Positions 12,800 through 40,700 of a stretch of 64,000 nt of DNA are shown here, piece after piece. Location: assembly GCA_000708835.1 (NCBI GenBank), contig DF237446.1, positions 4,130 to 68,129 of the forward strand, in the 5' to 3' direction. Made by a program: the position numbers and the translations under genes. The notes under the pieces are model-generated. The model was given only the letters and a program-made list of their open reading frames with translations, did not search any database and was not told the DNA's origin. The stretch is from Klebsormidium nitens. Its lineage: Eukaryota; Plantae; Klebsormidiophyceae. The stretch's first letter is position 1; each line of letters begins with the position of its first letter.

Positions 12800-15700
12800 T
12801 TAACCCACCTTGTTCGCAAACACGTGCCACTCCACGTCCTTATGGTCCGCGAGCGCCGCCGCCAGCTGGCGCTTGTCGGGCCGCAGCGTCGGGAGCTTGC
12901 CCCGACCGTGGAACATGCGCATGCCGGTCACGAGCGATGACAGCTGGCTGCCCGGGTCGGTCATCGCAAACAGGTCGGCCGCGGAAGCTACGATGAAGTC
13001 GAGCGCCGCCAGCTGGACGGCCAGGATGCATTTGCTTTGGTAAAAAATGCTGACCAGTGCAACTTTCAGTACGAAAGTACCCGTGATAAGCAACCGGAGG
13101 CATCCATGACATGCAACCAGGATCAGTACGCAACCCGCGATAAGTAGGCAAAAGACGGGTAATTTAGCGCGGGGTTAGGGTGGATAGGGGTGCGGAACCT
13201 GTTGTACATCTGGTTAAAATCTTCGCGCAGGGTTTGGAGAATATTGTCAGTCCAGGGGGCGGAAAACTCCTGTGTCCTCGAATGGAAGCCGCTCTCGAAG
13301 AAAGCTTAATATACCAGTATAACTTGTTTACCGTCTGTAGCGTTACTCGTTGTCTGTGCTGTGGAGCTCCCACGGTGACGGACGGTTTTTGGCGCTCGTC
13401 CCCTCATTTATCCGGTTCTGCTTCCTTTCGATCTTCGTGGCTTCAGTCTCGTTCTTTTCTGAAACTTCATAACCAGGAAACAGGCAGCACAAGGAAGGAA
13501 AGGTGGCCTGAAAAGATTCGTCTTACAAGTTGAAGAATGGTAGGAACGGGCAGAGTTCGGTACCGCTTTCTGGCCCACCTTGGCTCGAGAACCGGTGAAC
13601 GGCGCCAACTCCTCCGGACTGGCTAGCTGTTCCTTAGTCACGAAATAGGGGTACAACCCCCTAAGCGGAACCAGTCTGTCGGCGCCCCCCCAGACCTCCG
13701 CGGTGGTCAGGTAGATGCGGGTGCGCCTTTTCACACCAAGCGCCGCCAGCATGAGGACAGCCTCCTCCGGGGTGAGTGGACATTGGCCCGTCTTGCGCTG
13801 GGTCTTGGGGTCGGGCGCCCTGGAAAGAAGATGCGAAAACGACTGACGTCAGCAAGCCGGAGCCTTGTGGGGCCGGAGAAAACAGCTTCTCGCTGACGTC
13901 AGCCCGGGTATCACCTGGAGTCCTCGGCTTGGACAAGGCGTATGCGTCTAGAGTCATTCCGATAATTTAAAAACAGCCAGAAATGGAGTCAAGCAGAACG
14001 CACTGAATCAGGACCTTACTTATGGGCTCTTTCAGCGCAGGAGCTGTGATGGCTGCGTAAAGGAGAGACTGAGTAGCTTATTTGATAGGTACGTCGGCCC
14101 AGTAAGAAGTGGTGCCTCGACGACGCGACAATGGTTTTGGGAGAGACCAGGCGGGACCGTCCGTGGTATCGCTTCTGGAAGTATCAGTGACAAAACAATC
14201 CTTTCAGGATGAGTGCATGATTCCAACTTGTCTCTCCGTGCGAGCAATGGCCAGGCATCGGCTATCAATGTAGACTCAACCTTTCACAACGAATTTTTTC
14301 CTTCAACATTGGGTAACGTATCGACCTTCGAACGCTGACCCCGTCACTTCGATATTAGTGAAGGTAAACAACACCACCGAGACGCTTGAGTTCAGCACAA
14401 TCTAAGAGACTCAGTTGCGTGACGACTCACTTGCCGTTCCGCTCCCACCGCGCAAGCGCCTCAAACTGCGCCTCCCTCAGTCGCCTCAGCTCTTTCCTTT
14501 CTTCCTCCCCGCCCCCAAAATCGCACATCGAAAACGCCGCCAATTTCGCCGGAAAGTTCGCATGCAGCGCCACAAACCGCACCGGCCACCGCTCCTCTTC
14601 CTCGTACCGACTCCGCTCGACATCCACCGACACCCCTAGCCGTTCCCCGGGTTTCCCGGACCCCGCCCTGCGCCCGGGTTTCTCGGGATCGGCCACCGTG
14701 ATCTCCTCCCCGACCGCCGGCGCGACACGTGTCCTCTCCGCGAGCCCCTTGGTGTCGTCACCAAGAACTAGAGCGGTCTCGACATGCACGACCTCCATTC
14801 CCTCGTCCCTCTCCAACACCGTGAGGGTTTCGTCTTTCCCGAGCTCGCGCCCCGGGCGCGCGCCGGCGCGCGCGCTCTGCTCCTGCTGCTTCCGTTTCCG
14901 CTCGTCGCGGAGCCGCTGGTTCCGCATGTACCGCTGCACCGCCTCCGGCAGATGGCTGATGTCATCATCCGCGCCCACGTCCTCTGCTAGCAGCCGGCGT
15001 TTTCCGCCACCCCTAGTTCCCACCAAAACCTCTTCGTCCCTACTTTCTACTGGCCTTCCCCTGCTTCCAGTATTCCACACAGACTCCGTGCCACTGCTCT
15101 CTTCCACATTCGCCCCGCTCGTTGTTTCCAACGCGTTTCCGCCACCCCAAGTTCCTTCTACAGCTACCCCGCTTTTAAGTTGTCCTTTGCCCCTACTTTC
15201 TACCGCACCTTCTAGCAAACCTATTATACCGTTGTTCCTATCTACTTCGGGGTCTTCCACGAGACTCTCTTGTTGGTCGTCTCTTTCCAGGGACGTAGTC
15301 CGCCCCGCCATTTGCGCCCCCAACCTCTTTACCCCCTCTTCCGTTTGCAACACGCGCCTTCGAGGGCGTTTCTCCGCCCCGAAAGCAACCCCCACTAACT
15401 CGTTTGATGTAACTGACTCCGAAGAGTCAGCTTGACTAGTCTTCCTACTCCTATACGAGTTGTATTCTGAGCTACTCGAGCGCATCCGGTCGATCAGAAG
15501 GCGACCCATGGCCTGGATACGCGGCTGGAAGCGTAGCGCATGAAAGTTCACGCGGCACCTTAGTTTCTGCAATGACAAGAGGCTGGTTTTAGGTAACCCG
15601 CTTCCCTTCAAAAAGCCAAAGGTTACGAACTCGGAGGCAGGTGCTTTGTCTTTCGAGAGTCGTTTGAAAGTACTTGCTGGTAAGCTGACCCTTGGACCTG

Positions 15701-22806: not shown

Positions 22807-23791
22807 AAAGGTCAGCGATTCGTTTGGCCAAACTTTTGAAGCACGCATACATATATAAAGTTCGTCGACTTTCTGGGTAACACGTGATTGTGAACACACC
22901 CAGGAGCATCTGTCCGGACGCATCTGTCAGCTTTCAACGAAGCCTGCTCAGAGACTCTCAGTGTTGCGGTCATATCAAAATTTCCGGACAGCTCGATCTG
23001 GTTGCTGCAAGATAATTGACTGACGTTTGGGCCTAGCAAGATTTTTTTGTATCAGGATGAGCGGGCAATTCAAACGGCTCCATGCGGCCATTCTGATTGT
23101 GCATGTCGGAATATTTAGGGACTAAGGTGCATCAAAACAGCCTGTGAACCTTATTAATGTAGCGTGCAGTCTTGCAAACTGATAAGGTCACATGCAGCGG
23201 AGTCTATATCAGCCTTCAATGCAATCAAGCGTCATCATGACGCCTCCGATCGAGTGACCAGCCTGGATTGGCAGCTAAATTTTTGTTCTAAGCTAATCAC
23301 GCATGCATAAGTTGATAATCGGATCATGAGTGACCACTACCATCCAACCGTTGAACTTGAATGAACCATTCAGCTCCGAGGCTCGAATTGGCGTTTACAT
23401 AGGGCCATGTGCAGCTGCTAGGCGCGGTCGGCCGGCAATTTTTGTATTTACCTCTCATGGTGCTCATCGCCGGGAGCATTGGCAGGCTCATGCATGTGCA
23501 CCGGACCGCGAAACAATTCAGCAGAAAGATCTGATGGTTGGCCATATATGGCATCGATGTACAATGGCTTGTCAGTGAGCGGCCCCGGCAGACGGAACAG
23601 GTTTGTCCAAAAGCGCCTATATAAAGGGCGACTTCAACACTCAAACCAGCGTGGTCTCACTCACTCGTCGGACCAGTCGTGGCATCACGCTGGCACTGAG
23701 TGATCTTCAGTAGTGCGCACATTTACGGGCATTTACCTGCTGATTGTCACCAATCCTTGTATGGCCCAACTCGAAGCACCTCCATGTCGAA

Positions 23792-26700
23792 CTACTTGTT
23801 CGAGTAGAGCTGCCAAATCCGTCTACACAACGCAATCGCGTTCCTTTGACGCTCTTCTTGCACTTCGAAGGTCCAATCCGTTACCTCCTTTAGATTATCT
23901 GTCAACGGAATGTTGTTTGAGGTCCCCTGCCGGTTCTGCTTGCTGAAAATCTTCTCCTTCTTTTCCTTAAACCCTTGGTTCTTTGCTGCGGAGTTCTTCT
24001 TCCCCGATAACAGAACCAGGTTTCCCAGCTTATTCACGGCCTCATCGTACCGTCGATGGTCCTTTAGGAGCTCCTTCCATCCTGCGTCATCCGGGTTTTG
24101 CGGTGCCACGTGTTCCACGGACAGATTCGTCTCCAGGTACAAGTCGGCATACTTTGCACCCCCCTGAATCGTGTCAAACTCGTTCAGGCGCATCAGCAGG
24201 AGCTTCACGAGCCTACTCTGCCGGCTGCTTGTGTAGAGCGGCTTCTCGAGCGCCTCGAGAAACTCCTCAATCTCCTTGTGAGACAGATCCAGAGGCAAGC
24301 CTTCCCAGATGCTTCCCGACACGCTCGTTAGCCCGCGTTTCGTTGCAATGTCCCAACTGTCCAGCACCGTTTTGTAGCGCTCGTCTTGCAGCTTGACGCT
24401 CCAGCCGCGCACAAGCATGAACATCGAGAGCCGGTCGAGCTTCTCGAGGGTCTGCAAGAGGGCCCCGCTGTGATGGGCGAAGTCCTTGAACGCGAGAATC
24501 GCGACGGGGGCCCACCCGGGGAGCGTCCGTCCGTACCCCGGCTTGACCCTGCACGTGACACACAAGTTGAGCTTGTCAAAGGTACATACAAGCAGTGAGC
24601 AGGCAATGACAATTTTTGCTTTCCAGTTGGGGAGCTTCTATCCCACACGTCCACAAAAGGAAGGAACGGATATTCCCTGGAGGAATACGTAATTGACAAA
24701 AGTCGACAGCTCATTTGGGACTGCAGATCTAGCTACCGTCTCTAGGAACCAGTTCCGGGAAGCGGGAACGTTTCCTGACAAAAAGTGCTTACTGCCTAGG
24801 TTACGTTTGGCAGTTCTCTGCAGACCCCTCAAACAAGTGTACGCGTTTGGGAACCAGGTTCTCTTACAACGGAGTGATGCAGGACAATAAGTATCAGATA
24901 CGTTACATCTTAAGTACCCCTTTCCGATCCAGCGCCACCGCATCATCAAACGATCCCGTATGAGCCTGTTAAGGCCTGCCTTTCGCTGCCTTGCGAGTTT
25001 CACAATACTCACCGCCAGAGCAACCGCCGGAAGGTCTCAATCTCCCTCGCCTCCGTTTCGGAGCTGCACGTGTACCCCCCTTTCAATAGCTCCTCGTACG
25101 TCCTTGCGAATGGAAGCAGGATTTTGTCTAGAAACTGCGGCCCTTCTAGTTGGAAGTGGGCGTACGTTTTTGTGAACTCCTCCATCTCATCCTTGCATGG
25201 CTTGTCGAGGTAGATGAAAGACAGCACCTTGAAGGTGGCCGACAGATGGTCACGCCCAGCCTCGTCCCACTTTTTGTCAAAATCGTCCTGCAAATAGTTC
25301 ATCGGAGTTGATGGTATTAGACTTCAAGGTGCGGAACAGCGGACCTGAGCGATTCGAACGAAAGACTGACCGTTTGCAACCGGTTGCTGAAGCGATTCCA
25401 TGGTCAATCAAACAGATTTACGAAAGACAACGATCAGTTTTGATATGAGGTTGTCGAAGACAACCATCTGGACAAAGGAAAGTGTTAGCATAGAATCTCT
25501 AGGTGGAGAGATAATCAACGAAGCTTCCCGAATTCGTTAAGTAGCATTCACATCTTTGGGGTGCTAGGAGTAGGCTGTGTCGCTATATTAGGGCTCAAAT
25601 CAAGATGGAATCCAGCCAGCGAACCGTCAGAAACAGATGTAATCCTCAAGGCTCAAACCTTATTCAACACGTGCTTGGGGAAAGGCCATCTTGAGCTTCC
25701 TCTGGGTGCACACTTGAATGACTAACGGTAGATAAGCAGAGAAGTTTTGTTTGACAATCTACCGCTCCTACTCTCCGCTGTTGCTCTAGACAGCCTCCCA
25801 CTGATCTCCAGAAGAAAAGGGGGACTTTAGCCATAAAAGAACTTCGTCAGAAAAGCTGACCTGCTGTTCCTCAGGAATACTCTCCCACATGGTGGCCTTG
25901 ACTATGTCGATGGACTCCAGGTCGAGCCCTCTGTTGCTGGTAACTTTGAAGAACTTGATGGCGTCGTTGTGGGAGCTGCAGTGGCTCAGCAGCACCAGCA
26001 CCTTCTGCAGCATGTACCTATAGAGGTCGATGCACTCGTCCACATCCCTCTCCCGAATCTGCGACCAGATGTACTGGACGCAAAGAGCTAGTACTCGTTA
26101 GAAATTCTGCAGTACGATTTTGAAAACGAGCTCAACAGGCCTGAACCTTTTGCATGTCAAATTGTTTGCTTGATGATTGTTTGGATGCTTGAATTCGAAA
26201 AGCCCCGGTACATGAGACAAGAGATGCACTTGTGGACTGAAGACGGATGTCCCAATAAAGAATATCCCTATCCCCGTTATTGCGGTTTGACAACCGCAAA
26301 AAATGCACGAGCATCTTCTACGACCCTGACAAATTGTTGGATGATTCCACCTTTCTTTGCTCTCAGCCGGATAGCTATAGGCGCACGTACGTCCTTAAAG
26401 CAGCTTTAAGAACTGTGGTTTGATTGGTCCAGAAATCAGTTGTCAGCCCCTTTCAATGACGAGGCAAGCAAAGTCAAGCAGCATGAATAGTCAAGCTTAC
26501 CTGCAGATTCTGCCAAATGTTCTGCTGGGTCTCCCCTTTCAACACCTTTGCATCATAGTCCTGCCTGGTGAATTTTACTGGGTCTTGGAGCAGGTCATTG
26601 AAGAACTCTGCATCCTTTCTTTTGAGCTCAACCCTTGGTGCTGGGCTTCTCTGTGTACCCACGTCCCCCTCGTCCCATAGCGCTTCAGCCAACTTCTTAG

Positions 26701-27446
26701 CGAGCTTTTCGATCTCGGCTCGTTTTGCAGGCAACAGCTCATTGCTTTCTAGCTCCATTTCCAGCCGGCATTTCAGAGCGGCAAAAATAAGGCAGAGGGT
26801 CACCAGACGCTGCTGGCCATCCACCATGGACAGCTTGTTGGTCAGTGAGTCAATGGGAGGGCCTCGTGCCACTGTGACGAGGCCCAGGTGGCATTGACTC
26901 CGTTCACTGCATTGGATCAGGAACAGACGGGTTCGACAGTTGCGACATGAGAAGAGAAGAGTACCCGACATTGACTAACAGCTTCCTAGAAATACCTTAA
27001 CGCTCAAAGCCGTGCAGTTCCGACAGAGACTGTTTTCTCAATCTTGCACACATGATGAGAGGATTTTCAATCGCTTTACCAATGCAGATTATGGACAGAA
27101 CTATGCAGGCACTGTGTGCGGATTGAGGCTTCGCTTTAGTAGGTTCTGGTCCTGGAAGCCATGTGCTAATCAGGTGTGAATCCATTTTTCTACACAAAGC
27201 AAGAAATAAAGAGAGAGGAACAAAGTTCACGACCCCAACAAAGTACCCAGCAATAGAAGACGAGAGCCCGCACCTGATCTGAACGCTGCCTTGATTTGCT
27301 GCTTCCCACAAATCTGAAAGGAGATCCTCAGCATGCTCCTTCTGCCACGAGTAAGGCCTTTGATATGCCGGTAAGACAAAGAAGTGATTTTCGTCAAACA
27401 GCTTTAAGAGGACTGTCTGCTTTGCGTCCATCTGAGTTGCTTCCAT
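23792..27446 (-). CDS. GmrSD/SspE-like DUF262 + DUF1524(HNH) nuclease, ~607 aa, 5 exons (27446-27274, 26906-26501, 26073-25861, 25287-25013, 24548-23792); possible N-terminal extension to 27836
   Basis: DUF262 motifs LPAYQRPYSW, VDGQQRLVTL and FKVTSNRGLDL; DUF1524 motifs SVEHVAPQNP, LGNLVLLS and KNSAAKNQGF. Four GT-AG introns (phases 2,0,0,2) join into one 1824-nt ORF. Confidence 0.9.
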
Positions 27447-28546
27447 GTTTGATACATCACCCTGACCTGCAAAAGCTTGAGCATTTTCTAAAACCCTTTG
27501 GCGGACACGAGGAGCAGAAGTCAGCCCTTTAAATCCTAACAGAGGTCCATTAAGTGCATCTTTCCCAGAGGTTCGATGTTCTGGTGAGACGACCCTGAGG
27601 TTGTGGCCACCAGCAATACGATGTTGACCTGTGCCGCCCAAGTGTCGACGGCAGGATCGAAGAGGCACTTTAGCTCTCTGCAAAGCTGCTGTTACGTTGG
27701 CAGATGAAAAATTCTGGGATGAGGAAAGATAATCAGATCTATGGCTTCTTGCTTGATTAACTCTGCCGTCGAAATTTCGGGTAAGGGGGCTCCCACTGCC
27801 AGACTTGGAGGCGTTCTTGCATGCCTGAGTTGCCATGACTTCAATGCTCAGCTGAATTCTAGATCGGAAAGCGCTTGCCCGACTCTTGTGGACTGTCCTG
27901 CGCTTGCATCCCCCTCTGAAGGCTTACCAGCATGGCAGCAATGCAGCATTATCCAGCATTATCTATTAGCGAGCCTCCAGGGGAAGAACTCACTAGATCT
28001 CTTGCGTACTGAACTGTTCTCGCATCTCGTTGCAATGCGCATTTCATGACCCCTCATTCATGAAAATAGGCACCCGGGGGACGATTTGGGTTAGCTAGGT
28101 TGGTTAGGGTGGAAATGGTTGGAATGGGTAAGAGTGCGCGGGTGATGTTCTTGGTTAGGGCCTTGACTCTAAGTTGCCCGGGGCTCGATCTGCATCTTCG
28201 TAAATTAGCGGGTACCATTACCGTGTCAATGGCACTGGTTTTGCCGGGAATTCAAGTTTGAACTTGGAGCTGCTGCATCAGCGGATGTGGCACTTTCCTC
28301 AACACTGATTGGTTTGCATGCCAGCTCCGTAACATTGTTAGCCGTCGATGAGATTACCACGTGGCTATCCACTTTTGGCGGGACCAATTCGGTTGACCCT
28401 TTCTGCACTAGCCTCTGGGCACTGGTGGCAGCCTCTGATTCAGCCTAGGTAATTCAGGCTCAGGGTTCGCAGTCCAGATCTCCAATGGGCTGTGGCACTT
28501 TGAGAACTCCTTGCGATCTTGACGCTTGTTGAAGGTGGCGAAGCGA

Positions 28547-28576
28547 ACGTATTGAGACGTATTGAGACGTATTGAG
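28547..28576 (+). repeat. 10-bp tandem repeat x3
   Basis: (ACGTATTGAG)3, exact. Confidence 0.9.
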
Positions 28577-28747
28577 CGTGCCTAACTGAGAGCTGGGTGC
28601 ATGGTGGCACATTGCTGGCAGCTGGCCTTTTGTGTACAGTTGTGTCTCGAGCGGAAGCATCTGCAAGTGGGAGGAAGCAACGTCCTAGCGTCAAGACTCA
28701 TGTCCAACAACACCTGATCTTTCTGTTTCTCGATTGGATTTGGAAAG

Positions 28748-31700
28748 ATGCACTCCTCAAAGGTGCATGAACGCTGGCCCAGCGGGCAATGCATCGAAGC
28801 TTGGTGGCCTCTGGACAAGTGCTGGTACCGCGCAACAGTGTTGCAGTCGGTCGCTTGCACCAAGAAGCAGTTGGTGCTGTACGAAGATGGCGACGCAGAG
28901 GAGCTGGTTTTGGCTGAGCAGGAGCAGCAAGGCTTGATCCGGACAGTACCAGAACCGCAGCTTAATCTGCGCCAGAACCTGGTGACTGTGCATAAGCACC
29001 TGGCTTTGAATCTGGCAAATGAGGGATGGCACTTCTGCACCAGGTAAGTTGACAGACTCTCACATATCTTGCATCAGAATCCTGCTGACGAATATGTTTA
29101 TGTTGCCGGGAAATCGTTTGCAACAACCACCATAAAGTCCTGTTGCAGGCCATGTCAAAACCCTCTCTTTCGGTGCCCAGATGCTCCTCAGCTCTTCCAT
29201 CTTTTCAAGGTACACAGAGTTGTGCATTTGGGTCCAGAAGCCCTCTTTCTTAATCAGTCGGCCGCATGACCTCATGAGCTTATGAAACTCTCCGCGCTGG
29301 AATTGCTGTCAGTTGCATGCATCTCTTCCTGGTGGTCATGAGCTGGTCATGGTTGTTTTCCCTACAGTAAAGTGGCATTCCAACTTAGTTGTTCAGCTCC
29401 TGAAGGCCTTTGAATGCCACATTGTAGACGCTTTCATCAAGTCTCTAGCTGTGGCAGCAATTGCTTTCTGGCAATCTGGATTCTGACCTGATTCTGAAGC
29501 TCAGGTGGCACCCTAACACTTCCGTTCACTCTCCGTACGAGTAAAATATTACTTTTGCGCTGACTGGCCAGGTCTGAATATCTTCCTCGATCATCAGGAT
29601 CGATGAAGCTTAATAAAATCAGCCTATGCTGGTTGCCTCTAACAACCGCCTGCGCAGCCATCCTGTCTTTCCTGCGGCAACTTCAACGTACAGAAGCTGC
29701 CACGTACCCAATCTAGATTTCATCTTCGTCCTCTGTGACACCTTGTTAATCTGCATCTGGCTCATTCTCACCAGGTGCGACCAGACCCTGGAAAGCAAGC
29801 ACTTTCCCTGCCCCTGCAATCAGCCCATCAGCTTGCTCAGCGATGATGAGGAGGAGGAGAGCAGCCAGACACTGATGTGGGGGGGTCAAATCCTGAGGGC
29901 GGAGACCCCCTCGGCAATGAATCGGAGGCAGTGTCATGGATGCTTTGTGTCAGGAGGCGTCCAGCTTGGCGCGTCTGCTTGTCCAAATTGTGGGACAGAC
30001 CTGACCCCAAGGAGAACAAGAATTGGGCACTTGATGTCCCCAAAGGGTGAGCATGTGATTCTTTTCTCAGCTTCACTCCTCTTTTTCTTTTCTCTTTCTG
30101 CCCTTATGAAGCTGTTGACTGATCTTTGTATTATTGGGGTGTTTGCACAATCAAAGGTGATGCATTGCACAGTACCTTACACGGTCTGAACGGCTCTCTC
30201 AGCGCCCGAGTATGACTGGATCACATGCTGATGCAAAGCTGAACCTTCTGAAGCATCACCCGCCTGAGTTCCTGGATGAGCCATGGCGCCTATTGGACAC
30301 ATTGACAAGCAGAGTGAAAATGAAACCCTGATCACATGCCACTCATGGTTTGACTACATGAACAGCTGCAGCTTTGCCCAACTGCTTCCACTCCAGGCTG
30401 AACCACTTACATCTTTTGTAGCAAACCGGCTCAAAATGCCATCAGGCTTGCTTGACTGCGGTATCCTTAATAAAGTGCTTCGATCTGCAGCTGCGTCGTC
30501 TGGCGCCTCCGGTGTCTTCACTGGGCAAGTCCTTCGGGCAAGTCCTATCGACAGCGGTCAGCAGCAAGCCCCCAAGGCCACTTCCGAAAAGGGCGTGAAG
30601 ACAACACAGTGCGGGGGTCAGAGCGGGTTGTCTGTGAACGCGGGCCGGTTGCATCCGGAGGGCCAAAGGGGCGTGAGAGGCGCATTTGCGGGGGTGTCCA
30701 GAGGAGTTAAGAAGGAAGCAGAAGAGGTCGAGGGTCCAAAGACGAGAACCGTCAGAGGCGCCTTCGGGGGGGTTGCCAAAGTCGTCAAGAAGGAAGTGGA
30801 GGAGAGCAGATTCAGGATGGGGAATGTTCTGGCAGACTGCCAACGAATCCAGGGCGCTGGACGAAGCTCAGGGAAGGAGTATGAGCAGGGCGCACAAGAT
30901 GGGGCGCCTGGAACGGAAACAGGGACTCGTGTGCTGAGCCCATCCCCAAACTCAGCCTTGCCCATCGAAAACAGGTCGCAAGCGGCTTCAGCACCTGATT
31001 ACACTGGGGAGGCTGTGACCGGGTCCATCCCGCAGATCGTTGGCAAGGTTGAGACGGGCGGAACTGGGGGAAGCAGTGCTGTTTTGGACAAAGGAAACGA
31101 GGCTCGGGGCGACGAACGGAGGGTAGTGCGGGAGAGGGGCCAGGCTGTTGAAGGGGGTTGCTCTGAGGAGAAGAGGATTGTGACATTGACGGAGCTGCTG
31201 AAGGGTAAGATTGCATGTGCTTCTTGCTCGTTTCGCTACCAACGAGTCTGTCTTGAGGTTCTTTTCGACTAGAACCCGCTAGGCTCTCAGAATTTTCATC
31301 TGTAGTCCAAGTGCGGTCTGGTACTCTGACATTCAGCAAAGCTGTATGCCAGGTCGCTTCTGATGAGTGCACGTGGTCACACAGGGTCATTCCATTGAGT
31401 CGATAAGGCAGATGAGCCCAAGATGTATGATCCGTTCAGAATGACATCAAGGCACACTGTTTCCAGGCAGTCCGGTAGTCATAGTTGTCGCTAGCAGTCT
31501 TGTTACCAGTTTTGCTGCAGCTTGCGCGTAGAAACATAGGTCCTCTGCTCGCATCCGGTGCCTGACGGTACATTCTTCCCCCTCCCACACCACTCTCTTA
31601 AACAATCAAATGCATCTCAATTCAGTAAACTGTTTTTCTCCTTTTCAGCCACGGCCTTCGAGGCCCCGACCTGCTCCGAAGCCGCATCTGCAGCTCTTCC

Positions 31701-34700
31701 CCTCTCCAACGACTCGGCCCCGGCGGACCTCAGCCCTAACCCAGAGGACTTAAGCCCCAAACCCTCTGTTAACCCGTCCCGCACCCCCCAAAAAGCGTCA
31801 GTGGGCGCCAATCTAGACGAGAGCAGCCCACTGGCCCCTTTCGATGCTGGGCACTTTTCGGATGAGCGCCCACTATCAAACGCTGGCGAGTCAGCAGGCC
31901 CAGACAATGTCCTTCCGGAGGGGTTGGGCGAAAGACCAGTCTCGGACAGCTATCTCGGCCGGGGAGGATCAGACGCCGGGGCCGTTTCGGAGTCGCTGCC
32001 TTGTTCCGGGAATGTGGATATCGGGGCAGCTTCCACTACTAAGCGACCTGACGGGGAGGCTTGTTCGGACGGGTTCCCTTGCCTGCGGGACTTGGACACC
32101 GGGGCACGCCCGGACGGTTCTCCTTGTTTGATGGTTTCAGACACCGGGGCTGGGTCGATCAGAGTACTCGCTTCAGTGGCTTTCGATGCGGGAGCAACCC
32201 CAGAGCCCGGGGCGGTTTCGACAGGTGGCGCAAGTCCCGGGACTGGGGCTGCTCTGGGCGCCAAGGTGGTTTTCGATGCCGAGGCGGTTCTGGGCGCCGA
32301 AGCTGTTTCGGACTGTGAGGCACTTTCGGACGCTGAGGACATACCTGATGCCAAAGCGAACCCAGGTGCTGGCGCCGGCGCCGGCGCAGTGACAAACCCT
32401 GGGGTGATGTTGGACGCTGCAGAGAGATCGGACGCCGAAGCAACTTCGGACGCCGGGACCGTGTCGGACGCCTCCTGCTTGAGCTTTGCGTCCGCTCAGC
32501 AGGATTGGCAAGCCGGGGGTTCCAGTCCCGCGACGAACGGTGACAAGGCCCAGGAGTGCGCTCCGCATTTGGCAGACCCCTTGGTAAACCCGGCGCGCCA
32601 GTTCGCCCCGGAAACCTCAAGCCCTGCGTCGATTTTCTGTCTGGACGGCGCGTCTGCGGTCATGCCTGTGAAGCGCAGGTCAAATGCACCGGGGCTAGCG
32701 TCTCTGGTAACTGAATCGGCCCCCAGGGGGGGTGGGGCCAAAGACGGTGTCCTGACCCCCTGCAATCAGAACCCGAAGGCGGGAAAGTCGGAGATTCTGG
32801 AGAGCATGTTCGGGCAGGGGGGCTCTCAATGCAGCAGCGAACAGCGCCCCTCGGACCGAACAGGAGAGGACGTCGGAAGGCGTGCATCAGCGCGGCTTGC
32901 GGGGGGGGCTCCTAAGAGCACAAGCCTTTCTCACGGGTTGGGTTATCTTGGGGCACCGCTGGCGGCATTATCGGGACTGGGGTGGGCTCCTTGGGGGGGG
33001 GAGAGCGAGGTCCAGTTTCTGGGCACAGCTAAGGAAGTTGAGAAAGAGAAAGCCCGGTCGGCTGTCGCCGAGGTGGGGTCAAACGTCGCTCGTCAGGAAC
33101 CCCCCGAACCTGGACGGACGCTGCGCTTGTGGCAGAGCCTTAAGCAGCAGTTCTATGCCAAGACTGCTGCCAACCCCAGTTCCGCCGAGTTGGAAAAGCG
33201 GGCGGCGAGCTGTGACGGGAAACGCAGTGTGGAGTCCCTCGCTGGCGGACCTTGGAGCGCCAAGTTTGACACCTGCTCGGACTTCAGCCTGCCAAGCGAC
33301 TGGGTCCGTGACGTCACCTCGCCCCGGGGCACTGACGTCACTCGGGGCTCCCGTGTCTGGAAGTCGGTTGGAAGGCGGGCGAGTAGAGAGTCGGTCGGGG
33401 CTACGGAGGCGGACGCGGCTGGGACGAAAGCGGAACCGGAGCAAGGTTGCCTGCAAACGGAACCGGAACAGGGCGGAAAGGAGGCGGAAGGGGCTGCGTT
33501 GACAAAAGAGACCGGTGCGTTCGTAGGACAGAGCGCCTCGGAAGTGGAAACCGAGAAAACACGGGTCCGGAAGGAAGAGGACCGCTTGAGCCCGAAAATC
33601 AAGGAGGCTCCGTTAGGATTGGCGGGATGCCGGCCCGCCGCGGGCGCAGAAGCGACGGGACTGAAGCTTGAACCAGAACTGGGACTGCAGCAAGAAGGGG
33701 AACCAGATCGAACGCGAGCGGTCGGATCTGCCATCCAGGAGGAGGGAACGGAAGCCGGGCGAACGGATGATGAGGCAGAGGGGGTTACGGACGATATGCT
33801 GGCGGCGGCGTTGGGTGACGTGGATCAACTGATCGCGGAACATGAGCAGGTGGAAAATGTCTCCATCCTGATCTGCAATTACAATGTTTAGAACTCTAGA
33901 AGCCGTTTTCAAGGTCTGCTTCTTTCTAGGAACAGAAGTTTCAAATGGAGTGCCTGACCGTATTTTGCTGCAGCACTTATCTTACTGCATTCGGTCATCC
34001 TTTTAGAAACTTGTCTTGGTCTTATGCAAATCTCGGCCGACTTCAAGAGACGTGCGAGCTGGTGTTTTCACAAGGTGACTTCAGCGTTAATTTTGATTCC
34101 ATTTCATTGGACACTGTAGCTTCCTTTGACACCAACTTTGGCACCAACTGCGACACTTGTCTCATGTTGAAGCATTCGAAGCTCAGAGTTTTTCAGATTT
34201 CATTAGACGTTTCAAAGCGGTCGCTTACCAATCTCGTCTTGACCTTTGTTTGCCAGGCGTCCGATGAGTTCGCTTCCGCCAGTCCCCAAATCAGTGCCCA
34301 CTTCGGCAGTCCCCTGTGCCGCTTCCCCCCAAGCGACGCACTGCCCGAGCTGCGGCTAAAACGCAAGCGGTCCTCTGCGCCCCGGAAGCCGCCACGTCGC
34401 AGCCCACAGACGAAGCAAACAGATGACGAAGAGGTGGTTGAGGTTCGAAGCCCCCAATGGCAGGACGGCCGAAACTCGGGGCTGGTCAGTCCGGACGGGA
34501 GCGTGTGCCGCGGGCGCATAAGGCGCGTGCCGGACGTGTACCGGACGTCCGCGTCGCTCGAGTTTCGGGTGGAGGACCAGGTGGGGCTGAAGTCGCCCCT
34601 CGGAAGCGAGGCGACGTCGGGGAAAAAGAAGCGGAAGGGGGAGCTGAAGTCTCCTTTCGAAGAGGAGGCGACGTCGGAAAACAGAAGAAGAAAGGGAGGG

Positions 34701-37700
34701 GCGAAAGTTGCGAATGAAGGGGTGTTAGGCGCAGTGAGCGGCGAGAATGGAGGAAAGGCGACGCTGGAGAAGAGGAAGGAGGAAGGAGTGTCGGAAGCCG
34801 TGAGGGGAGGGGAGGGGGGAATTGCAGCAATAGTAAAGCACGGAGGGAAAGAGGTGTCGAAGAGAGAAGAGAAGACTGGCGTAACCATTGCCGGCCTGGC
34901 TTGCAACGGTGGGGACGTCGACGATGGGGGCGTGAGCGGCACAGCAAGCGGCACTCACGAGGAAACGGCGACGGAGAGTAAGGGAGTATCGAAAGCCATG
35001 ATGAAACCGGCGGCGACCGGTGCACCGAGCAGTGGAGCCGACGACGGGGCGCGGTTGGAGGGGCAGAAAAGAGAAAAGGTGGGCATTGCGAGTGGCGGAC
35101 GCTTGGAGGGTGGCCTCGCTGACGTCACCGCTGCGACCGGGGGCAGCGGAAAGAAGCGGAGGACGAAGCGGAAGAGAGCGGCGGGGGCGGGGGGTGTCGT
35201 TTCGGGGGGGTCGGAAGGAGGACTGCAAACGGAAAGTATGGCGGGGGGAGCTTCGACGGAGTACGGGGGTCTGGAGCGTGGGCTTTGGGAAGGGCTGCTA
35301 AGGGGGCTTCAAGAAAGGGAGGGAGAAGTTACCTCTTCCACCGACGGTGGCCGGAATGCTGCAAAGACCGGTGATGTTTGGAAACATGGTGAGGCAGATT
35401 GCTTGGGAGAGGGGAGTCCCGAGGAGAGTAACCGGTCGCTTACGGACGTCGAAACTTTTGACAAAGACGAGCGGAGACCTGCCCAGGGGATCCCTCGTGG
35501 GGAAGAACGGGTTGCTCCGAGAAACGGGGAAGGGGGATGCATCTCCGAGGTAAGTGGCGGCATGGAGTGGGGGCAGAAGCGGAAACGCGCCCGGGGTGCG
35601 GACGTCGGCGCAGACCTGGACGGGCTATCCGGGTGTCCGAAAGCGGACGGTGGCTTATTCGTTCGTGCAGCAGATCTGAAAGCCGGTCAGAAGCTTGACG
35701 GCTTGAGCGACTGCGGCGCTGGAATCGCCGAGACTGCCCTAAGCAAGGACGCGGAAGCTTCTGAGGGAGGGAAGGGGGGAGAGGAGATGGGCGGAGCAAA
35801 GGGGGGAGCAGAGGAGAATGAAGAGCAAAAAGGGGGAGAAAAGGGAGAGGTAGAGCAAGTGAGCGGAGTTGAGAGGAAGGGGGAGAGAGGCGCCGAGGCA
35901 AAGATGGAGGCACATAGAGAGGACCGTGAGACGAAGGAAGAGAGAATAGGAAAAAGAAAGAAGACGGAAGATCTGGAAAGGAAAGCAGGGACCGCGGGAG
36001 GAGTAGCGGATAGGACTCCGTCATCGGGAGTTGATGACGTGGACTGGGAAGAGGCGTCCCTGAGTCTGAAGCCCCTGAGTCCCCCGCTGTCGCCGTTCCA
36101 GCTGAGACTGGCCCAAAGCCCTGGGCTCCAGTCAGAGGGATCCCCTTCCAAGTGCCTCCCCGAGCTCCTTCCAGGTTCGCAGCTACATGTCGACCCGGTT
36201 CCGCCGGACTGCGGAGAACAATCCAAAGCCGGAGGCGACGTCATGCTGAAGTTAATGCCGGGTGGACTCCTGGCGCTTCCCCGGCTGGTCGAGGAGTCGC
36301 CGTCCCCGCTGCCCCGTCAGACAGTGCCAGCTGGCAGCCCCTCAGTCGGCGCTCAAACCCTTCAAATCCTGCCGCCCAGCGACAACCCCTTGCCGGCGGT
36401 TTTCGGCGACGCAGCGAGCGTTGCTCCCTTCCAGATCCCCAAATTCGGCCAGGAAAGCCTTCCTGCGATTGGTTCAGCAGGCGGCGTGCAAGATCCGGAT
36501 TCCGCTTCAAAGGAGCCCCCGCAAAGCCCCCGGGTTGCTCCGCTACAAACTGCCCAGCTCCTAAGCACGCCCCCCCGGAACCAGGGGGCCCAAACCGCCC
36601 AGCAAACGGCCCCCCGGAGCTGCCAAACGTCGACCTCGGAAACTGCCCACCTTCTAAGCACACCTCCCCGGAACCAGGGGGCCCCAACCGCCCAGGAAAC
36701 GCCCCCCCGGAGCTGCGAAACGTCGACTTGCCCGGTGGACCCGGCCTTCGGCCCTACCCCAGAGAGCAAGCACAAGCGCCGGCGGATGTCGTTTTCCCCG
36801 GCCGTTAAAAAGCGCCTCGTCTCGCTGGCCAGCCCGCTGTCTCAGACCGACGCCGATGATACGGACGCGTTCTGTGCCCCAAGGGGATCCCCCTACTTCG
36901 CGCGCAAACGGCGGTCAGAAAACCGGGTTGACGAAAACCGAGCTAGCGACTCCCGATCGTTGCAGCGCCAATCGGAAGTGGGCAGCGTGAGCCGCGACTC
37001 CGAAGTGGGGGCTTCCGAGTCGGATCTGTCGTTTTCGGGGGGGCAACCGAGCTGGGGAGCTGAGGGGGGGAATGGTGAGAGGCCATCCCCCCAGACGAAG
37101 CGTGCGAAATTCAGCTTGTGGCTGGATGAGGGGACGCCGACAAAAGCGGCGCTGGTGGAGAGTCCGCTGGAGCTGTCCGTCCGAGACGGACAAAGTGTGG
37201 AAAACGGAACGGATGACCCCGGAAAGTGGTGGAACGAACTTCGGGGGAGTGAGCCGCTCAAAGCACACACTTTCGGCGGTGCCAATAACAGAGACTTGAG
37301 CGAAGCAGCCTTGGGGGACAGGAACAGCCCTAACTGGGGCCCCCCCAAAGGAGACAAGTCGCAACTCCGTGCGACAGAGTGGGCGGAAGGCGATTTGTTG
37401 GGCGAAAACGGAACGCCGGGCGTCGAACGGTGGCTGACGCTTCCGGAGGGGACTGGTTTCGACGACGAAACGGGGCCCCGGGTGGATAAACCGGGCGCAG
37501 GCCGCCAGCTGAAGACGGGTGTAAAGATGCCCGGTGAAAGTGCACGGGAGAGGGGCGTGGACAGATTGAGGGAGAACTTATCCAGGACTTTGGAGAGGGT
37601 GGGGGTGAAACTGGCGAAAGCGGATGGTGAGAGCGGGGCGCAACGGGAGTCACAGGTGAGATTCGCAACGTGAATCTTAATAAACTTTCTGAGAATTCCA

Positions 37701-40700
37701 CCATGCGGAATCAATTGACTGTTCGTCCGCTAAACGTGCGATCATTCTACATTCCGGACTAGGCTTTGCAATTGCAGAAGTGTGAGGCTTGATGAATGGA
37801 CAGGAGACTCGACATGTTCTGATGGAAGCGGTTTGCATCAAGATAGGAACTGCCTTTCCACACACCCCCGCCGGTCTAGATTCCGCAGCACGCCCTGACC
37901 ATGCTTTAAGCGCGTTCTAAATGCGTATCCGTCGATTTTTTGCTTGCCAGGAGGGTCAAGCTCAACCCAAGCCGGTCAGGCTAGGGCTTCCTTCCGGCAG
38001 CCGCACACGTAAGCCGCCCTGCTCACTTATGCCGGAACTTTTCAGTCGGCATAGAGACGCTGATTGTTGAAGCCAAACATAAATATGGTGCAGTAAACGA
38101 ATCGCTGAGCAGTGCCCAATGTAGCAAAGGTCGTTGGCAGGCAATTACGCGGTTTCTAATGTCAACATAACTGCTGATGTTTCAATGCCCGTGTTACATC
38201 TGGTTGCGGAGACGTTGGCTTCCGGCGTATCTTGGCGGTTTGTCGCATGGGCTGTGCGTGGTCAGCTCAAATCCCGCTTGGAAATATTACTCCAATTGCT
38301 TTACCCTACGGTATAAAGTGGATGGTCTTTCAGAATCAGTCCCTCTTTCTTCGGCTCGTCATCCATCTCTGTGGGTGGTCTGAGCCAAACAAGGCTGACC
38401 TTACGATTGATTGAATGCATCAAGTTGTGCGAGACCCATATGCTGACGTTGCGCTGACGCCACCGTCATCTTTCCGTTCCCAGGGCTACTCCCCGGGCTG
38501 CACCCCGAGTCAATCGAATGCGACAGCCCGGGTGCCAAAGGCCACTCGTGGGATCCCCCAAACGAACTCAAACATGCCCGGGGGATCCCCCACAAATTCC
38601 AGCCAAGCCGCCCCTTCTCTCTGCGGGTCGGCGAGTCCGAGGTGCAACCGGTTAAAGCTCAAACCGGGGAAGCGTACCGACCGTCAAACTCCGGTGTTAG
38701 TAGGGGATCTGACGGGGCCCCTCAACCGGTGAAACTCTCACGTAGCTTGCGTCTGCTCCAAGCGGCAAAGGACATCGCCGATAAACGCGCCGAAGCAGAG
38801 AAGCGCGCCGCAGATAATCCGAACCCGAGCCCGATAACCCTCCCGATAACCCTCCTTAACCAGAACAGGGGTTTGGGTCAGTTTGATTGGACAGGAAGCG
38901 ACAGCCCAGTAGGTTTGAGGGGCATAGGCGAACGGGCCAGAGGGATAAGCGGACGGGAGAGGGATATAAGCGGGGGTGAAAAGGGGATAGGGAGGCGGCC
39001 GAGTCTGGACGAGGTTACGAGGGAGAACACGCGGCTCAACTCGTTCCGGTTGCACTTCCCGCCCCTTCCCCCGGTGGTCAGGAAGAAGAAGCGACGGCGG
39101 TTTGTCATGCGCATGAAGAACGCACCCTGTAACCGGTCCGGTAACGAGTCCCTTAACCCGTCCGGTAACGAGGCCCTTAACTCACCTAGCAACGGGGCCA
39201 AAGTCGGAAGCAATCCGTCCGAATCAGGGGGAAACAAAATCGCAAAGGGGGTGGTCTCGCCTGGCGTTTCTCCGCCCGGGGAGGCGATTCACACCTCGCC
39301 CAATTTTGCACTCGCCTTTCCCGAGTGTGTCAAGTCGGCAACCCACCTCCCCGATTCCCCCTTGTCACCCAGCCCCCTGAAAGCCATCCCCTTCTCCTTG
39401 TTGCTCGACCTGTCCCCCTCTCCGGAAAAGGCCAGCAGCGACTCTGATGACGTCACTTCGGGTCCGGTGACGTCGGATGACGTCACTTCTCAGGACAACG
39501 GCCCCCCCAGGCAAAGGCCCTCCGTAAGCGGCGGGTCAATGAGGAAGGAGAGCCCCGTCCTCAAGGGCCCCGCAGGCTGCGGCAGCCCCCTGCGAACCTC
39601 TAGAGGTTCCGGGTGCCCGAAAAAGAGGGCGGGGACCTCGGGGGGAACTCTGAAGGGTCCCCAAGTTTCTTGGGGCGCGGCTGCGGCCGAGCCCTGGGGA
39701 AGCGAGGGCCCGCAAGCCCTGAGGGGTTTGCAGCCCGGAACCACTTCGGTTAAGGGGATCCTTAAGAGAAGGTCAAGCTTGTCGGGCGACTCTGGGCCCC
39801 AGTCTCGGAGCGTTAAGTCGCCGGAAACAGTGAGCAGAGGGGCGGAGGAGGCCGTTTCTGGGGCCTCATTGGAGGGTGAGTTTCCCAACTGACAAATCTG
39901 AGTTGAAGGAAGGCCGGACATGGGTAAAACATGAAGGTTATTGGAATTGGCTGATCGGGATCGCGTATTGAATATTTCGTTGTTTTCGTGGGGGAAATCA
40001 GAGACACCCATCTAACAAAATGAGTGATCACCATCAATATATTGGTGGTTAAGCAGTTTCATTCAAGGAGGAAACTGATCAAACCCCATTCAGTCAACCA
40101 TCACTTTGCCACCAGTTTATCGAACAAACTCATTCAGTCTGGTTTTGCTTTCTTCCCCTGCAGGTAAGGCGCTCGAAGGTGCTGAGGTCACGCTCGGCGC
40201 TGTCTCGACACCTCCAGACTCGCAGTCACGGGTGAGTTTCCGCTCTGGTTGACAACCTCTATCTCCATGCAAATCGTCTTTCTATTCTTTTCCCCGGCGA
40301 GCCTTTCAAAGTCAGACAAACAAGTGCCTCCTACAATGCAAATCGTCTTTCCATTCTTGTCCCTGGCAAACCTTTCAATGACACACAAACAGGTATTCAA
40401 TGACTCCCAAATTTTTGACTCATGTGAATGAGTCGAGAAGAGCACTTTTCGCGTTGTTGCAAGTCAACTGGGTCAGATCAAGCCGTCATCATCAGCCGTC
40501 ATCTGCAAAAGGATACTCGCGATACCGAAGTTCGTGATGACCATTAGTTTTCAGGATCAACCGAATGTCGTGGGCTTGCACACGAGGCATCATCAGTGAG
40601 GAAGGATTGTTCAGGGCTTCCCTCGGCCGCAGACAAACCTCGGCGACTTCGTGTCTGCGACAGGACTTTCCCATATTGATCCGGTCACATAGGGCTGTCA

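What the first reader, a model, noticed from the sequence alone, without database searches (positions are those of the whole stretch)
23792..27446. Intron-containing, apparently intact GmrSD/SspE-type restriction nuclease in an algal nuclear genome
Five exons join into ~607 aa with the DUF262 NTPase/sensor motifs (PxYQRxYxW, DGQQR) and a DUF1524 HNH domain that retains EH, GNL and the downstream Asn. In bacteria this fusion is the Type IV modification-dependent restriction enzyme GmrSD, which cuts glucosylated-hmC phage DNA, or the phosphorothioate-sensing nickase SspE. Four canonical introns with no frameshift or stop argue for a domesticated host gene, not contamination. Hypothesis: a eukaryotic innate defence nuclease against modified DNA of giant viruses or other invaders, or a reader/cutter of an endogenous DNA modification.
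Basis: partly seen in the sequence, partly recalled or inferred. Interest (0 to 1): 0.9.

Follow-up and report, generated by a model that had tools for sequence, protein, structure and literature searches.

The report
Spliced algal GmrSD-type restriction nuclease gene
A green alga carries an expressed, intron-containing nuclear gene for a bacterial "type IV restriction" enzyme (an NTP-driven sensor joined to a DNA cutter). All catalytic residues are intact, and a new N-terminal tail has been added; no such gene has been studied in a complex-celled organism.

Summary
On the minus strand, five exons (27446-27274, 26906-26501, 26073-25861, 25287-25013, 24548-23792) join through four GT-AG introns into a 607-aa frame. 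RNA contigs from four studies show all four junctions exactly.

- **Family:** the spliced protein aligns end to end (410.8 bits) with a profile built only from 153 bacterial DUF262-DUF1524 proteins. It keeps PAYQRPYSW, DGQQR, EH..PQ, GNL and both downstream Asn.
- **Subfamily:** the best defence-system models are PADLOC 'Orf5' and HEC-06, ahead of SspE. BrxU scores weakest. The nearest solved folds are SspE-CTD, DndI and BrxU.
- **Relatives:** four related loci in other assemblies share all four intron positions. dN/dS is 0.12-0.18 with saturated dS, so the transfer is old and the gene is constrained. Three of these copies carry different recent stops or motif lesions.
- **Origin:** the eukaryotic clade sits on a very long stem, with no identifiable donor phylum. 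Phage or prophage copies are no closer than bacterial ones.
- **Start codon (new here):** translation probably starts at ATG 27836. That adds a basic, Ser/Ala/Gly-rich, acid-poor 130-aa extension lying outside the bacterial profile. It is kept open in three lineages and may be an organelle transit peptide.

Function is inferred, not shown. Eukaryotic homologues were noted in 2015 but never studied, so I file this as a new member of a known kind.

The parts
27837..28097 (-). 5' leader of the transcript. The RNA contig ends lie at 27989-28097. The leader carries 4-9 short upstream ATGs.
27447..27836 (-). Probable N-terminal extension of 130 aa, starting at the in-frame ATG 27836 (context GAAGTCATGG). 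It has net charge +13, is rich in S/A/G/R and has only 6 acidic residues. It lies outside the bacterial profile.
27274..27446 (-). Conserved part of exon 1 (aa 1-57 of the 607-aa model), the start of DUF262/GmrSD_N. It holds LPAYQRPYSW at 27345-27374.
26907..27273 (-). Intron 1 (367 nt, GT-AG, phase 2).
26501..26906 (-). Exon 2 (aa 58-193), the DUF262 core. It holds VDGQQRL at 26804-26824.
26074..26500 (-). Intron 2 (427 nt, GT-AG, phase 0). It is partly retained in lower-depth RNA contigs.
25861..26073 (-). Exon 3 (aa 194-264), the end of DUF262 (F235, R241, G242, D249, K252).
25288..25860 (-). Intron 3 (573 nt, GT-AG, phase 0).
25013..25287 (-). Exon 4 (aa 265-355), the helical linker.
24549..25012 (-). 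Intron 4 (464 nt, GT-AG, phase 2).
23792..24548 (-). Exon 5 coding part (aa 356-607 plus stop): the rest of the linker and the DUF1524/GmrSD_C His-Me finger. SVEHVAPQ lies at 24098-24121 and LGNL...N...N at 23978-24031.
23604..23791 (-). 3' UTR. RNA contigs end at 23604-23656.

Best explanation
This is a bacterial single-protein GmrSD-like type IV restriction enzyme gene. It joins a DUF262 ParB/Srx-like NTPase-sensor, a helical linker and a DUF1524 His-Me-finger nuclease.

Shown:
- An ancestor of this alga and at least two related lineages captured the gene by horizontal transfer.
- It has since gained four spliceosomal introns and a eukaryote-specific N-terminal extension of about 130 aa.
- It is now a constitutively transcribed nuclear gene under purifying selection.

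Inferred: it still works like its bacterial relatives. NTP binding and hydrolysis at the DGQQR site, probably in a dimer, gates the EH...N...N nuclease. The nuclease nicks or cuts DNA carrying a non-self chemical mark, so the protein polices foreign DNA (viral, plasmid or bacterial) in whichever compartment the N-terminal extension sends it to.
For: Real spliced gene:
- All four junctions appear in RNA contigs of four studies.
- 20 RNA runs hold the locus.

Family:
- Pfam GmrSD_C scores 4.4e-22, with GmrSD_N pieces on exons 1-3.
- A profile built from 153 bacterial full-length homologues aligns residues 2-605 at 410.8 bits, E 5e-121. None of 20 shuffles scored.
- 74 of 97 positions that are at least 85% conserved in bacteria are kept, including every invariant one.
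- The AF2 model of exon 5 (pLDDT 87.5) hits SspE-CTD, DndI and BrxU first, then Cas9 HNH domains.

Catalytic competence: the residues whose mutation abolishes defence in HEC-06 (Q79, R80, E471, H472; bioRxiv 10.1101/2024.01.29.577857) correspond to Q90, R91, E501 and H502, all present here.

Old transfer and constraint:
- L001, L002, L083 and L084 share the four intron positions.
- dN/dS is 0.12-0.18 with dS above 1.7.
- The eukaryotic rows form one clade with support 100.

Extension: the coding frame stays open 164, 177 and 156 codons upstream in three lineages. Only 0, 2 and 3 of 5000 shuffles reach those lengths, and the other frames are closed.
Against: - No biochemical or genetic test of any kind has been done.
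- The eukaryotic clade sits on a stem of about 3.3 substitutions per site. The family-typical YFLGS is CHLGL and the conserved N239 is S, so the activity may have changed.
- Three of the four relatives carry lesions: L001 a TGA stop; L002 a TAA stop plus DGQQC; L084 a stop, a frameshift and DSQQR. The gene is therefore dispensable in some lineages.
- A modification-dependent nuclease in a nucleus that may itself carry methylated DNA needs an explanation.
- The start codon and the compartment are unresolved.
Confidence: 0.6

Rival explanations
1. The enzyme is the same, but it works inside a chloroplast or mitochondrion. The 130-aa extension is a transit peptide, and the protein surveys or degrades organelle DNA: marked, damaged or foreign molecules, or copies destined for elimination. 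It is not a nuclear or cytosolic antiviral factor.
For: - The extension is a eukaryote-specific addition in front of the point where bacterial homologues begin.
- Its composition fits a transit peptide: net charge +13, 16 Ser, 14 Ala, 14 Gly, 14 Arg and only 6 acidic residues, with the first 22 residues free of acidic residues.
- No classical basic NLS cluster was found in the window copy.
- The sequence is unconserved, yet the frame is kept open in three lineages, as is usual for transit peptides.
Against: - No targeting predictor could be run.
- 130 aa is long for a transit peptide.
- The L001 and L083 extensions carry acidic residues near their first Met and some Cys/Trp.
- The leader has several uORFs, so the start codon used is unproven.
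Confidence: 0.3
2. The protein has been neofunctionalised. After transfer it kept its fold and motifs but changed its job, for example to an NTP-dependent DNA-binding, repair or chromatin factor that no longer restricts foreign DNA.
For: - The eukaryotic clade has a very long stem branch.
- Several strongly conserved bacterial positions are replaced: Y63C, F64H, S67L, V69T, N239S, D361Y, R410Q.
That would show that the sensor domain can be reused.
Against: - Every invariant catalytic residue of both domains is kept under purifying selection.
- The architecture is unchanged end to end.
Confidence: 0.15
3. The gene is a dispensable relic: a transferred gene still transcribed but on its way to loss, with no current function in this alga.
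For: - Independent stops, a frameshift and DGQQR-motif lesions occur in L001, L002 and L084.
- A further decayed DUF1524 fragment lies beside L002.
- Introns are partly retained and the transcript has uORFs.
Against: - The window copy and L083 are fully intact over more than 600 codons, although dS between the lineages is saturated.
- dN/dS is 0.12-0.23 in every pair, even between the damaged copies.
- Recurrent recent loss against a background of constraint is also what costly, conditionally useful defence genes show.
Confidence: 0.08
4. The stretch is bacterial contamination or an assembly artefact.
For: None beyond the bacterial affinity of the protein.
Against: - Four spliceosomal introns are removed in RNA.
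- The G+C content matches the flanks.
- A eukaryotic-type neighbour is present.
- The same intron positions occur in independent assemblies.
Confidence: 0.01

Closest known systems
PADLOC 'Orf5' (PDLC02686) and HEC-06 GmrSD-like single-protein phage defences (Payne et al., bioRxiv 10.1101/2024.01.29.577857)
   Same: - The length class (~560 aa core) and colinear DUF262-linker-DUF1524 architecture match.
- These are the best-scoring defence models: exon 5 scores 4e-26 against Orf5 and 5e-18 against HEC-06.
- The DGQQR and EHxxP residues shown to be essential in HEC-06 are present.
   Different: - It is a eukaryotic nuclear gene with four introns and a 130-aa N-terminal extension.
- Identity to any bacterial member is at most about 37-41% in the C-terminal half.
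- It sits on a long stem branch.
- There is no defence-island or Hma context.
- What the PADLOC name 'Orf5' refers to could not be traced.
GmrSD of E. coli CT596/UT189 (type IV restriction of glucosyl-hmC DNA; Machnicka et al. 2015, PMC4619093)
   Same: It belongs to the same Pfam pair, PF03235 + PF07510, fused in one chain with an alpha-helical linker. The same motifs are present.
   Different: Substrate specificity is unknown here. No direct comparison with the E. coli enzymes was made.
SspE and DndI, phosphorothioate-sensing nickases (PDB 7DRI, 7DRR, 6JIV, 9JFL)
   Same: - They are the nearest solved folds for the C-terminal half (Foldseek E 5.7e-4 to 1e-2, TM 0.51-0.55).
- They are also the nearest PDB sequences (E 2.6e-4 to 4.7e-3).
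- The IEHIAPQ...LGNL...N motif aligns.
   Different: - Identity is only 16-17%.
- PADLOC SspE models score far below Orf5/HEC-06 (3e-12 against 4e-26).
- SspE is about 770 aa and works with the SspABCD modification genes; no such partners are seen here.
BrxU (BREX-associated GmrSD-family enzyme, PDB 7P9K/7P9M)
   Same: It shares the two-domain family and the NTP-dependent dimeric nuclease paradigm, and it is a structural hit.
   Different: The match is weaker (TM 0.38-0.39). The HEC-05/BrxU PADLOC model reaches only 7.9e-4.
Eukaryotic GmrSD homologues counted by Machnicka et al. 2015 (three eukaryotic genomes of 613; Thalassiosira oceanica shown in their alignment)
   Same: They are a family member encoded in a eukaryotic genome.
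   Different: Those were only listed. Here splicing, expression, selection, shared introns and the added N-terminal extension are documented. The relation to the diatom protein was not tested.

Membership tests
GmrSD family (PF03235 + PF07510 fusion) | N-terminal DUF262/GmrSD_N domain with the (I/V/L)PxYQRxYxW motif | tested here: met
   Exons 1-3 hit PF03235 in colinear order. LPAYQRPYSW lies at aa 25-34. P26, Y28, Q29, R30, P31, Y32 and W34 are all kept.
GmrSD family (PF03235 + PF07510 fusion) | DGQQR nucleotide-hydrolysis motif | tested here: met
   D87, G88, Q89, Q90 and R91 are present. These positions are 99-100% conserved in 153 bacterial members.
GmrSD family (PF03235 + PF07510 fusion) | C-terminal DUF1524/GmrSD_C His-Me finger with (D/E)H...N...N | tested here: met
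   PF07510 scores 4.4e-22. E501, H502, P505, Q506, W513, N532, N541 and N546 are invariant and kept. The model shows a strand-strand-helix core, and the fold hits are SspE, DndI, BrxU and Cas9 HNH.
GmrSD family (PF03235 + PF07510 fusion) | The two domains sit in one chain, joined by a 200-400 residue helical linker | tested here: met
   The alignment to the bacterial full-length profile is end to end. Helices are predicted for aa 367-480 of the exon-5 model. The first part of the linker (exon 4) was not folded.
GmrSD family (PF03235 + PF07510 fusion) | NTP-dependent cleavage of modified DNA | not testable with these tools
   This needs purified protein and defined substrates.
GmrSD family (PF03235 + PF07510 fusion) | Protection against viruses or foreign DNA | not testable with these tools
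   This needs phage assays in E. coli, or knockout and challenge in the alga.
SspE (Ssp phosphorothioate system effector) | Best match to SspE models, and association with the SspABCD modification genes | tested here: not met
   SspE models score 3e-12 or worse, against 4e-26 for Orf5. The gene is a monocistronic eukaryotic gene. The ten largest neighbouring ORFs gave only an O-FucT hit, though the whole window was not scanned exhaustively.
BrxU (HEC-05) | Best match to the BrxU/HEC-05 model, and a BREX context | tested here: not met
   The HEC-05 model reaches only 7.9e-4. There is no BREX context in a eukaryotic locus.
HEC-06 / PADLOC Orf5 subfamily | Full-length colinear match, and conservation of the residues essential in HEC-06 (Q, R of DGQQR; E, H of EHxxP) | tested here: met
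   Exon 5 covers Orf5 profile positions 349-566 of 566 at 4e-26, and the nearest bacterial relatives score 1e-140 to 5e-175 on that model. Q90, R91, E501 and H502 are present. Membership is by score ranking only; the tree places the eukaryotic clade on a long unplaced stem.

The most novel reading that the evidence does not exclude
A eukaryote has re-targeted a bacterial type IV restriction-like enzyme into an organelle through an acquired transit peptide. There it acts as a restriction system for chloroplast or mitochondrial DNA, removing marked, foreign or unwanted organelle genomes. Recurrent knock-outs in relatives would reflect the cost of carrying such a nuclease.
Probability: 0.15. Interest if true: 0.85.

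Novelty: new member of a known kind. Interest (0 to 1): 0.55.

Why it matters
Several bacterial immune modules (cGAS-STING, viperin, TIR, Argonaute, gasdermin) are known to work in eukaryotes. Restriction enzymes of the modification-dependent type are not among the studied cases.

This locus is a clean, testable example. It is a single intact gene that is spliced and expressed, constrained for a long time, and retains every catalytic residue. It has a eukaryote-specific N-terminal addition, and natural loss-of-function copies in relatives can serve as controls.

Showing what DNA it cuts and where it acts would answer two questions:
- whether eukaryotes use restriction-like discrimination of DNA chemistry against giant viruses or other invaders;
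- whether they use it on their own organelle genomes.

It would also add a compact NTP-gated nuclease from a new lineage.

Tried and rejected
- **Contamination or artefact:** rejected by spliced RNA and by shared introns.
- **Pseudogene in the window:** rejected. There is no stop or frameshift in 607 (or 737) codons. Relatives do carry lesions.
judged less likely.
  - The Met is not conserved; L001 has Ile-Ser there.
  - The frame stays open upstream in three lineages.
  - More than ten ATGs would precede it in the transcript.
- **Conserved sequence in the extension:** only the last ~23 aa before MDAKQ are similar between the window and L001. The rest is not alignable.
- **Synteny with the related loci:** none. 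Only the exons align.
- **Viral donor:** IMG/VR homologues reach at most 39% over short pieces and about 30% over the domain, no closer than bacteria.
- **Donor phylum:** unresolved. Relatives are spread over Cyanobacteriota, Actinomycetota, Bacillota, Pseudomonadota, Bacteroidota and an archaeon, and the eukaryotic clade joins on a weak node.
- **NCBIfam:** no hit, even for the bacterial relatives.
- **PDB sequence search with exon 2:** nothing significant; DndI scored E 0.37.
- **ESM Atlas:** only bacterial clusters were found.
- **Literature:** no paper on an algal or other eukaryotic GmrSD function was found.
- **Searches with the whole spliced protein:** not possible, because it has no reference and could not be typed. 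No word-index search, full-length fold or own-protein look-up was therefore done.
- **First run of the full-length alignment with MAFFT L-INS-i:** timed out and was redone with --auto.
Full report
**1. The observation**

The finding lies on the minus strand. Six-frame translation shows five open segments. They join through four GT-AG introns into 1824 nt, which is 607 codons plus a stop.
- Exons: 27446-27274, 26906-26501, 26073-25861, 25287-25013, 24548-23792.
- Introns: 367, 427, 573 and 464 nt, in phases 2, 0, 0 and 2.

Pfam places GmrSD_C (PF07510) on exon 5 at 4.4e-22. Successive parts of GmrSD_N (PF03235) fall on exons 1, 2 and 3 at 1.5e-08, 1.9e-07 and 0.019. No second copy lies in the window.

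**2. RNA evidence**

Twenty RNA runs from seven studies, under two organism labels, hold 30-71% of the sampled words of 23700-27900. I laid contigs from four runs of four studies on 23200-28900. They show exactly the four predicted joints, with no mismatch and no other joint.

Single contigs of 2532 and 2663 nt run from about 23604-23627 to 27989-28097 across all five exons. Lower-depth contigs run through intron 2 and into intron 4, so some intron retention occurs.

**3. The start codon and an N-terminal extension**

The transcript extends 550-650 nt upstream of ATG 27446, and the coding frame is open back to 27923. An in-frame ATG at 27836 has a purine at -3 and G at +4. Starting there adds 130 aa with net charge +13: 16 Ser, 14 Ala, 14 Gly, 14 Arg and only 6 acidic residues.

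Three observations favour the upstream start:
- **The 27446 Met is not conserved.** In relative L001 it is replaced by Ile-Ser. Only the next Met (MDAKQ/MDAVQ) is shared.
- **The frame is kept open in three lineages.** It stays open 164, 177 and 156 codons upstream of that shared Met in the window, L001 and L083. The other two frames close within 0-79 codons. Only 0, 2 and 3 of 5000 shuffles reach those lengths.
- **The extension is a eukaryotic addition.** A profile of bacterial homologues begins to align at residue 132 of the 737-aa form.

The sequence of the extension is not conserved, except for the last ~23 residues. It is basic, rich in hydroxylated residues and poor in acidic ones in all three lineages, and the window copy has no classical basic NLS cluster.

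This is the usual signature of an organelle transit peptide. However, no targeting predictor was available, 130 aa is long for a transit peptide, and the leader carries several uORFs. I treat 'translated extension' as likely (about 0.8) and 'transit peptide' as open (about 0.3-0.45).

**4. What the protein is**

An exhaustive HMMER search of 1.84 billion cluster representatives with exon 5 gave 1245 hits. Only four of them are close (60-69% identity), and all four are fragments. The next hits are two-domain proteins of about 555-580 aa at 41% identity or less, with PxYQRPYxW, DGQQR near residue 80 and EHVLP near residue 460.

- **Colinearity:** a profile built only from 153 such bacterial proteins aligns the spliced model from residue 2 to 605 at 410.8 bits, E 5e-121. 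No shuffle scores.
- **Conserved positions:** of 97 columns conserved in at least 85% of the bacterial proteins, the window protein keeps 74, including all invariant ones.
  - N-terminal half: P26, Y28, Q29, R30, P31, Y32, W34, D45, G66, D87-R91, R149, D156, F235, R241, G242, D249, K252, W271.
  - C-terminal half: E501, H502, P505, Q506, W513, N532, N541, N546, K552, W581.
- **Departures:** YFLGS becomes CHLGL, and there are also N239S, D361Y and R410Q.
- **Defence-system models:** exon 5 scores best on PADLOC PDLC02686 'Orf5' (4e-26, profile 349-566 of 566). HEC-06 models follow (5e-18), then SspE (3e-12), and HEC-05/BrxU only at 7.9e-4. The nearest bacterial relatives score 1e-140 to 5e-175 on 'Orf5'. 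NCBIfam has no model for them.
- **Essential residues:** HEC-06 is an experimentally validated phage defence in which Q79A, R80A, E471A and H472A abolish protection (bioRxiv 10.1101/2024.01.29.577857). The equivalent residues here are intact.
- **Structure:** PDB sequence search with exon 5 finds a DUF262 protein (1.9e-05), SspE-CTD (2.6e-04) and SspE (4.7e-03), aligned over the EH...GNL...N motif. An AlphaFold2 model of exon 5 with 64 homologues (pLDDT 87.5, pTM 0.86) is helical, with a strand-strand-helix core at the motif. Foldseek ranks SspE-CTD, DndI, BrxU and SspE first, followed by Cas9 HNH domains.

**5. Relatives, age and selection**

The four close fragments led to four loci:
- L001, from a Logan assembly;
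- L002 and L083, two contigs of one JGI metagenome that are about 80% identical over the whole locus, introns included;
- L084, from another Logan assembly, 94% identical to L002.

All four have the same exon plan, with GT-AG introns at the same four protein positions. Flanks and introns do not align with the window.

Pairwise Nei-Gojobori estimates give dN/dS of 0.12 (window-L001), 0.15 (window-L083) and 0.18 (window-L002), with dS of 1.7-2.0. The closer pairs give 0.14 for L002-L083 (dS 0.24) and 0.23 for L002-L084 (dS 0.07). The transfer and the intron gains predate the split of these lineages.

The state of the copies differs:
- L083 is intact.
- L001 has one TGA stop in exon 5, plus P31D and W368C.
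- L002 has a TAA stop, DGQQC, and a stop in the extension.
- L084 has a different stop, a frameshift in exon 2, and DSQQR.

None of these lesions is shared. They are therefore recent and independent, unless they are assembly errors, which I could not check. This pattern of long-term constraint with repeated recent knock-outs fits a costly, conditionally useful gene. It does not prove one.

**6. Origin**

Homologues in one genome per prokaryotic species reach at most 37% identity over the C-terminal half. They are spread over many phyla and one archaeon. Phage and prophage contigs are no closer.

In a maximum-likelihood tree of 116 full-length rows, the three eukaryotic sequences form one clade with support 100. 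That clade sits on a stem of about 3.3 substitutions per site and attaches at an unsupported node. A bacterial origin is clear, but the donor is not identifiable. The long stem leaves room for functional change.

**7. Context**

The G+C content of the gene (0.48-0.52) matches its flanks. Of the ten largest neighbouring ORFs, only one has a Pfam hit, a plant-type O-fucosyltransferase piece. A block of long low-complexity ORFs lies at 31.5-40 kb. There are no partner genes of the Ssp, Dnd or BREX kind, as expected for a monocistronic eukaryotic gene.

Earlier unchecked notes of this scan add three points:
- They name the genome as Klebsormidium nitens.
- They report a separate 12-exon, nuclease-less DUF262 gene conserved into land plants.
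- They report a Z1-helicase-like gene.

I could not test any of these. Their relation to this gene is open.

**8. How it most likely works**

- **Shown:** the gene structure, expression, family, intact motifs, constraint and eukaryote-specific extension.
- **Inferred from the family** (Machnicka 2015, PMC4619093; the BrxU, SspE and HEC-06 work cited): the DUF262 domain binds and hydrolyses NTP at DGQQR, probably in a dimer. It thereby controls the His-Me finger, in which H502 acts as the general base and the Asn residues hold the metal. The nuclease nicks or cuts DNA that carries a non-self modification.
- **Unknown:** which modification it senses, and in which compartment it acts.

I give 0.6 to 'still an NTP-gated DNA nuclease policing foreign or marked DNA'. 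Within that, about 0.3 goes to action in an organelle.

**9. Novelty**

Machnicka et al. 2015 already counted three eukaryotic genomes among 613 with GmrSD homologues, and showed a diatom sequence in their alignment. The presence of the family in a eukaryote is therefore not new.

I found no paper that analyses such a gene's splicing, expression, selection or function, and none on algae. I file it as a new member of a known kind. The added points are the N-terminal extension, the shared introns and the recurrent inactivation in relatives. Interest is 0.55: a solid and readily testable case, without any surprise in mechanism yet.

**10. Limits**

- The whole spliced protein has no reference, so it could not be sent to the word-index search, the cluster look-up or the structure predictor. 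The N-terminal domain was therefore judged by sequence only.
- The host organisms of L001, L002, L083 and L084 are unknown.

Noticed in passing
window 26047-26530 and 24520-24895: Lower-depth RNA contigs run through intron 2 and into intron 4. This is partial intron retention, which would truncate the protein after aa 193 or 355.
   Followed up: no
window 27837-28097 (minus strand): The 5' leader holds 4-9 short upstream ATGs, with uORFs of 5-33 codons ending before ATG 27836. This suggests translational damping of a potentially toxic nuclease.
   Followed up: partly
L001:7992-7994; L002 exon 5 (aa ~462) and the DGQQC codon; L084 exons 2 and 5: Three related copies carry different, unshared lesions: a TGA stop; a TAA stop plus R-to-C in DGQQR; and a stop plus a frameshift plus G-to-S in DGQQR. 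Even so, dN/dS stays at 0.12-0.23. The knock-outs are either recent and independent or assembly errors.
   Followed up: partly
L002:1544-1881 (minus strand): A further decayed DUF1524 fragment, with stops and frame changes, lies about 2 kb upstream of the L002 copy. It is a remnant of another duplicate.
   Followed up: no
L002 versus L083 (same JGI metagenome): Two contigs are about 80% identical over more than 10 kb, including introns and flanks. One has an intact copy and one a damaged copy. They could be homeologous loci, a segmental duplication or two related species in one sample.
   Followed up: partly
window 31558-39892 (plus strand): Three long ORFs (777, 1242 and 416 aa) are rich in A/G/S/E/P and have no Pfam hit. 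GC and AT skew are strong at 34-36 kb. They probably encode a large disordered protein.
   Followed up: no
window 14427-15611 (minus strand): An ORF piece matches GDP-fucose protein O-fucosyltransferase (PF10250, 9.9e-11), a plant-type neighbour gene.
   Followed up: no
window 28540-28900: A separate, more highly covered transcript contig (2750 nt, depth 41.6 in run X5) starts about 450 nt beyond the 5' end of this gene.
   Followed up: no
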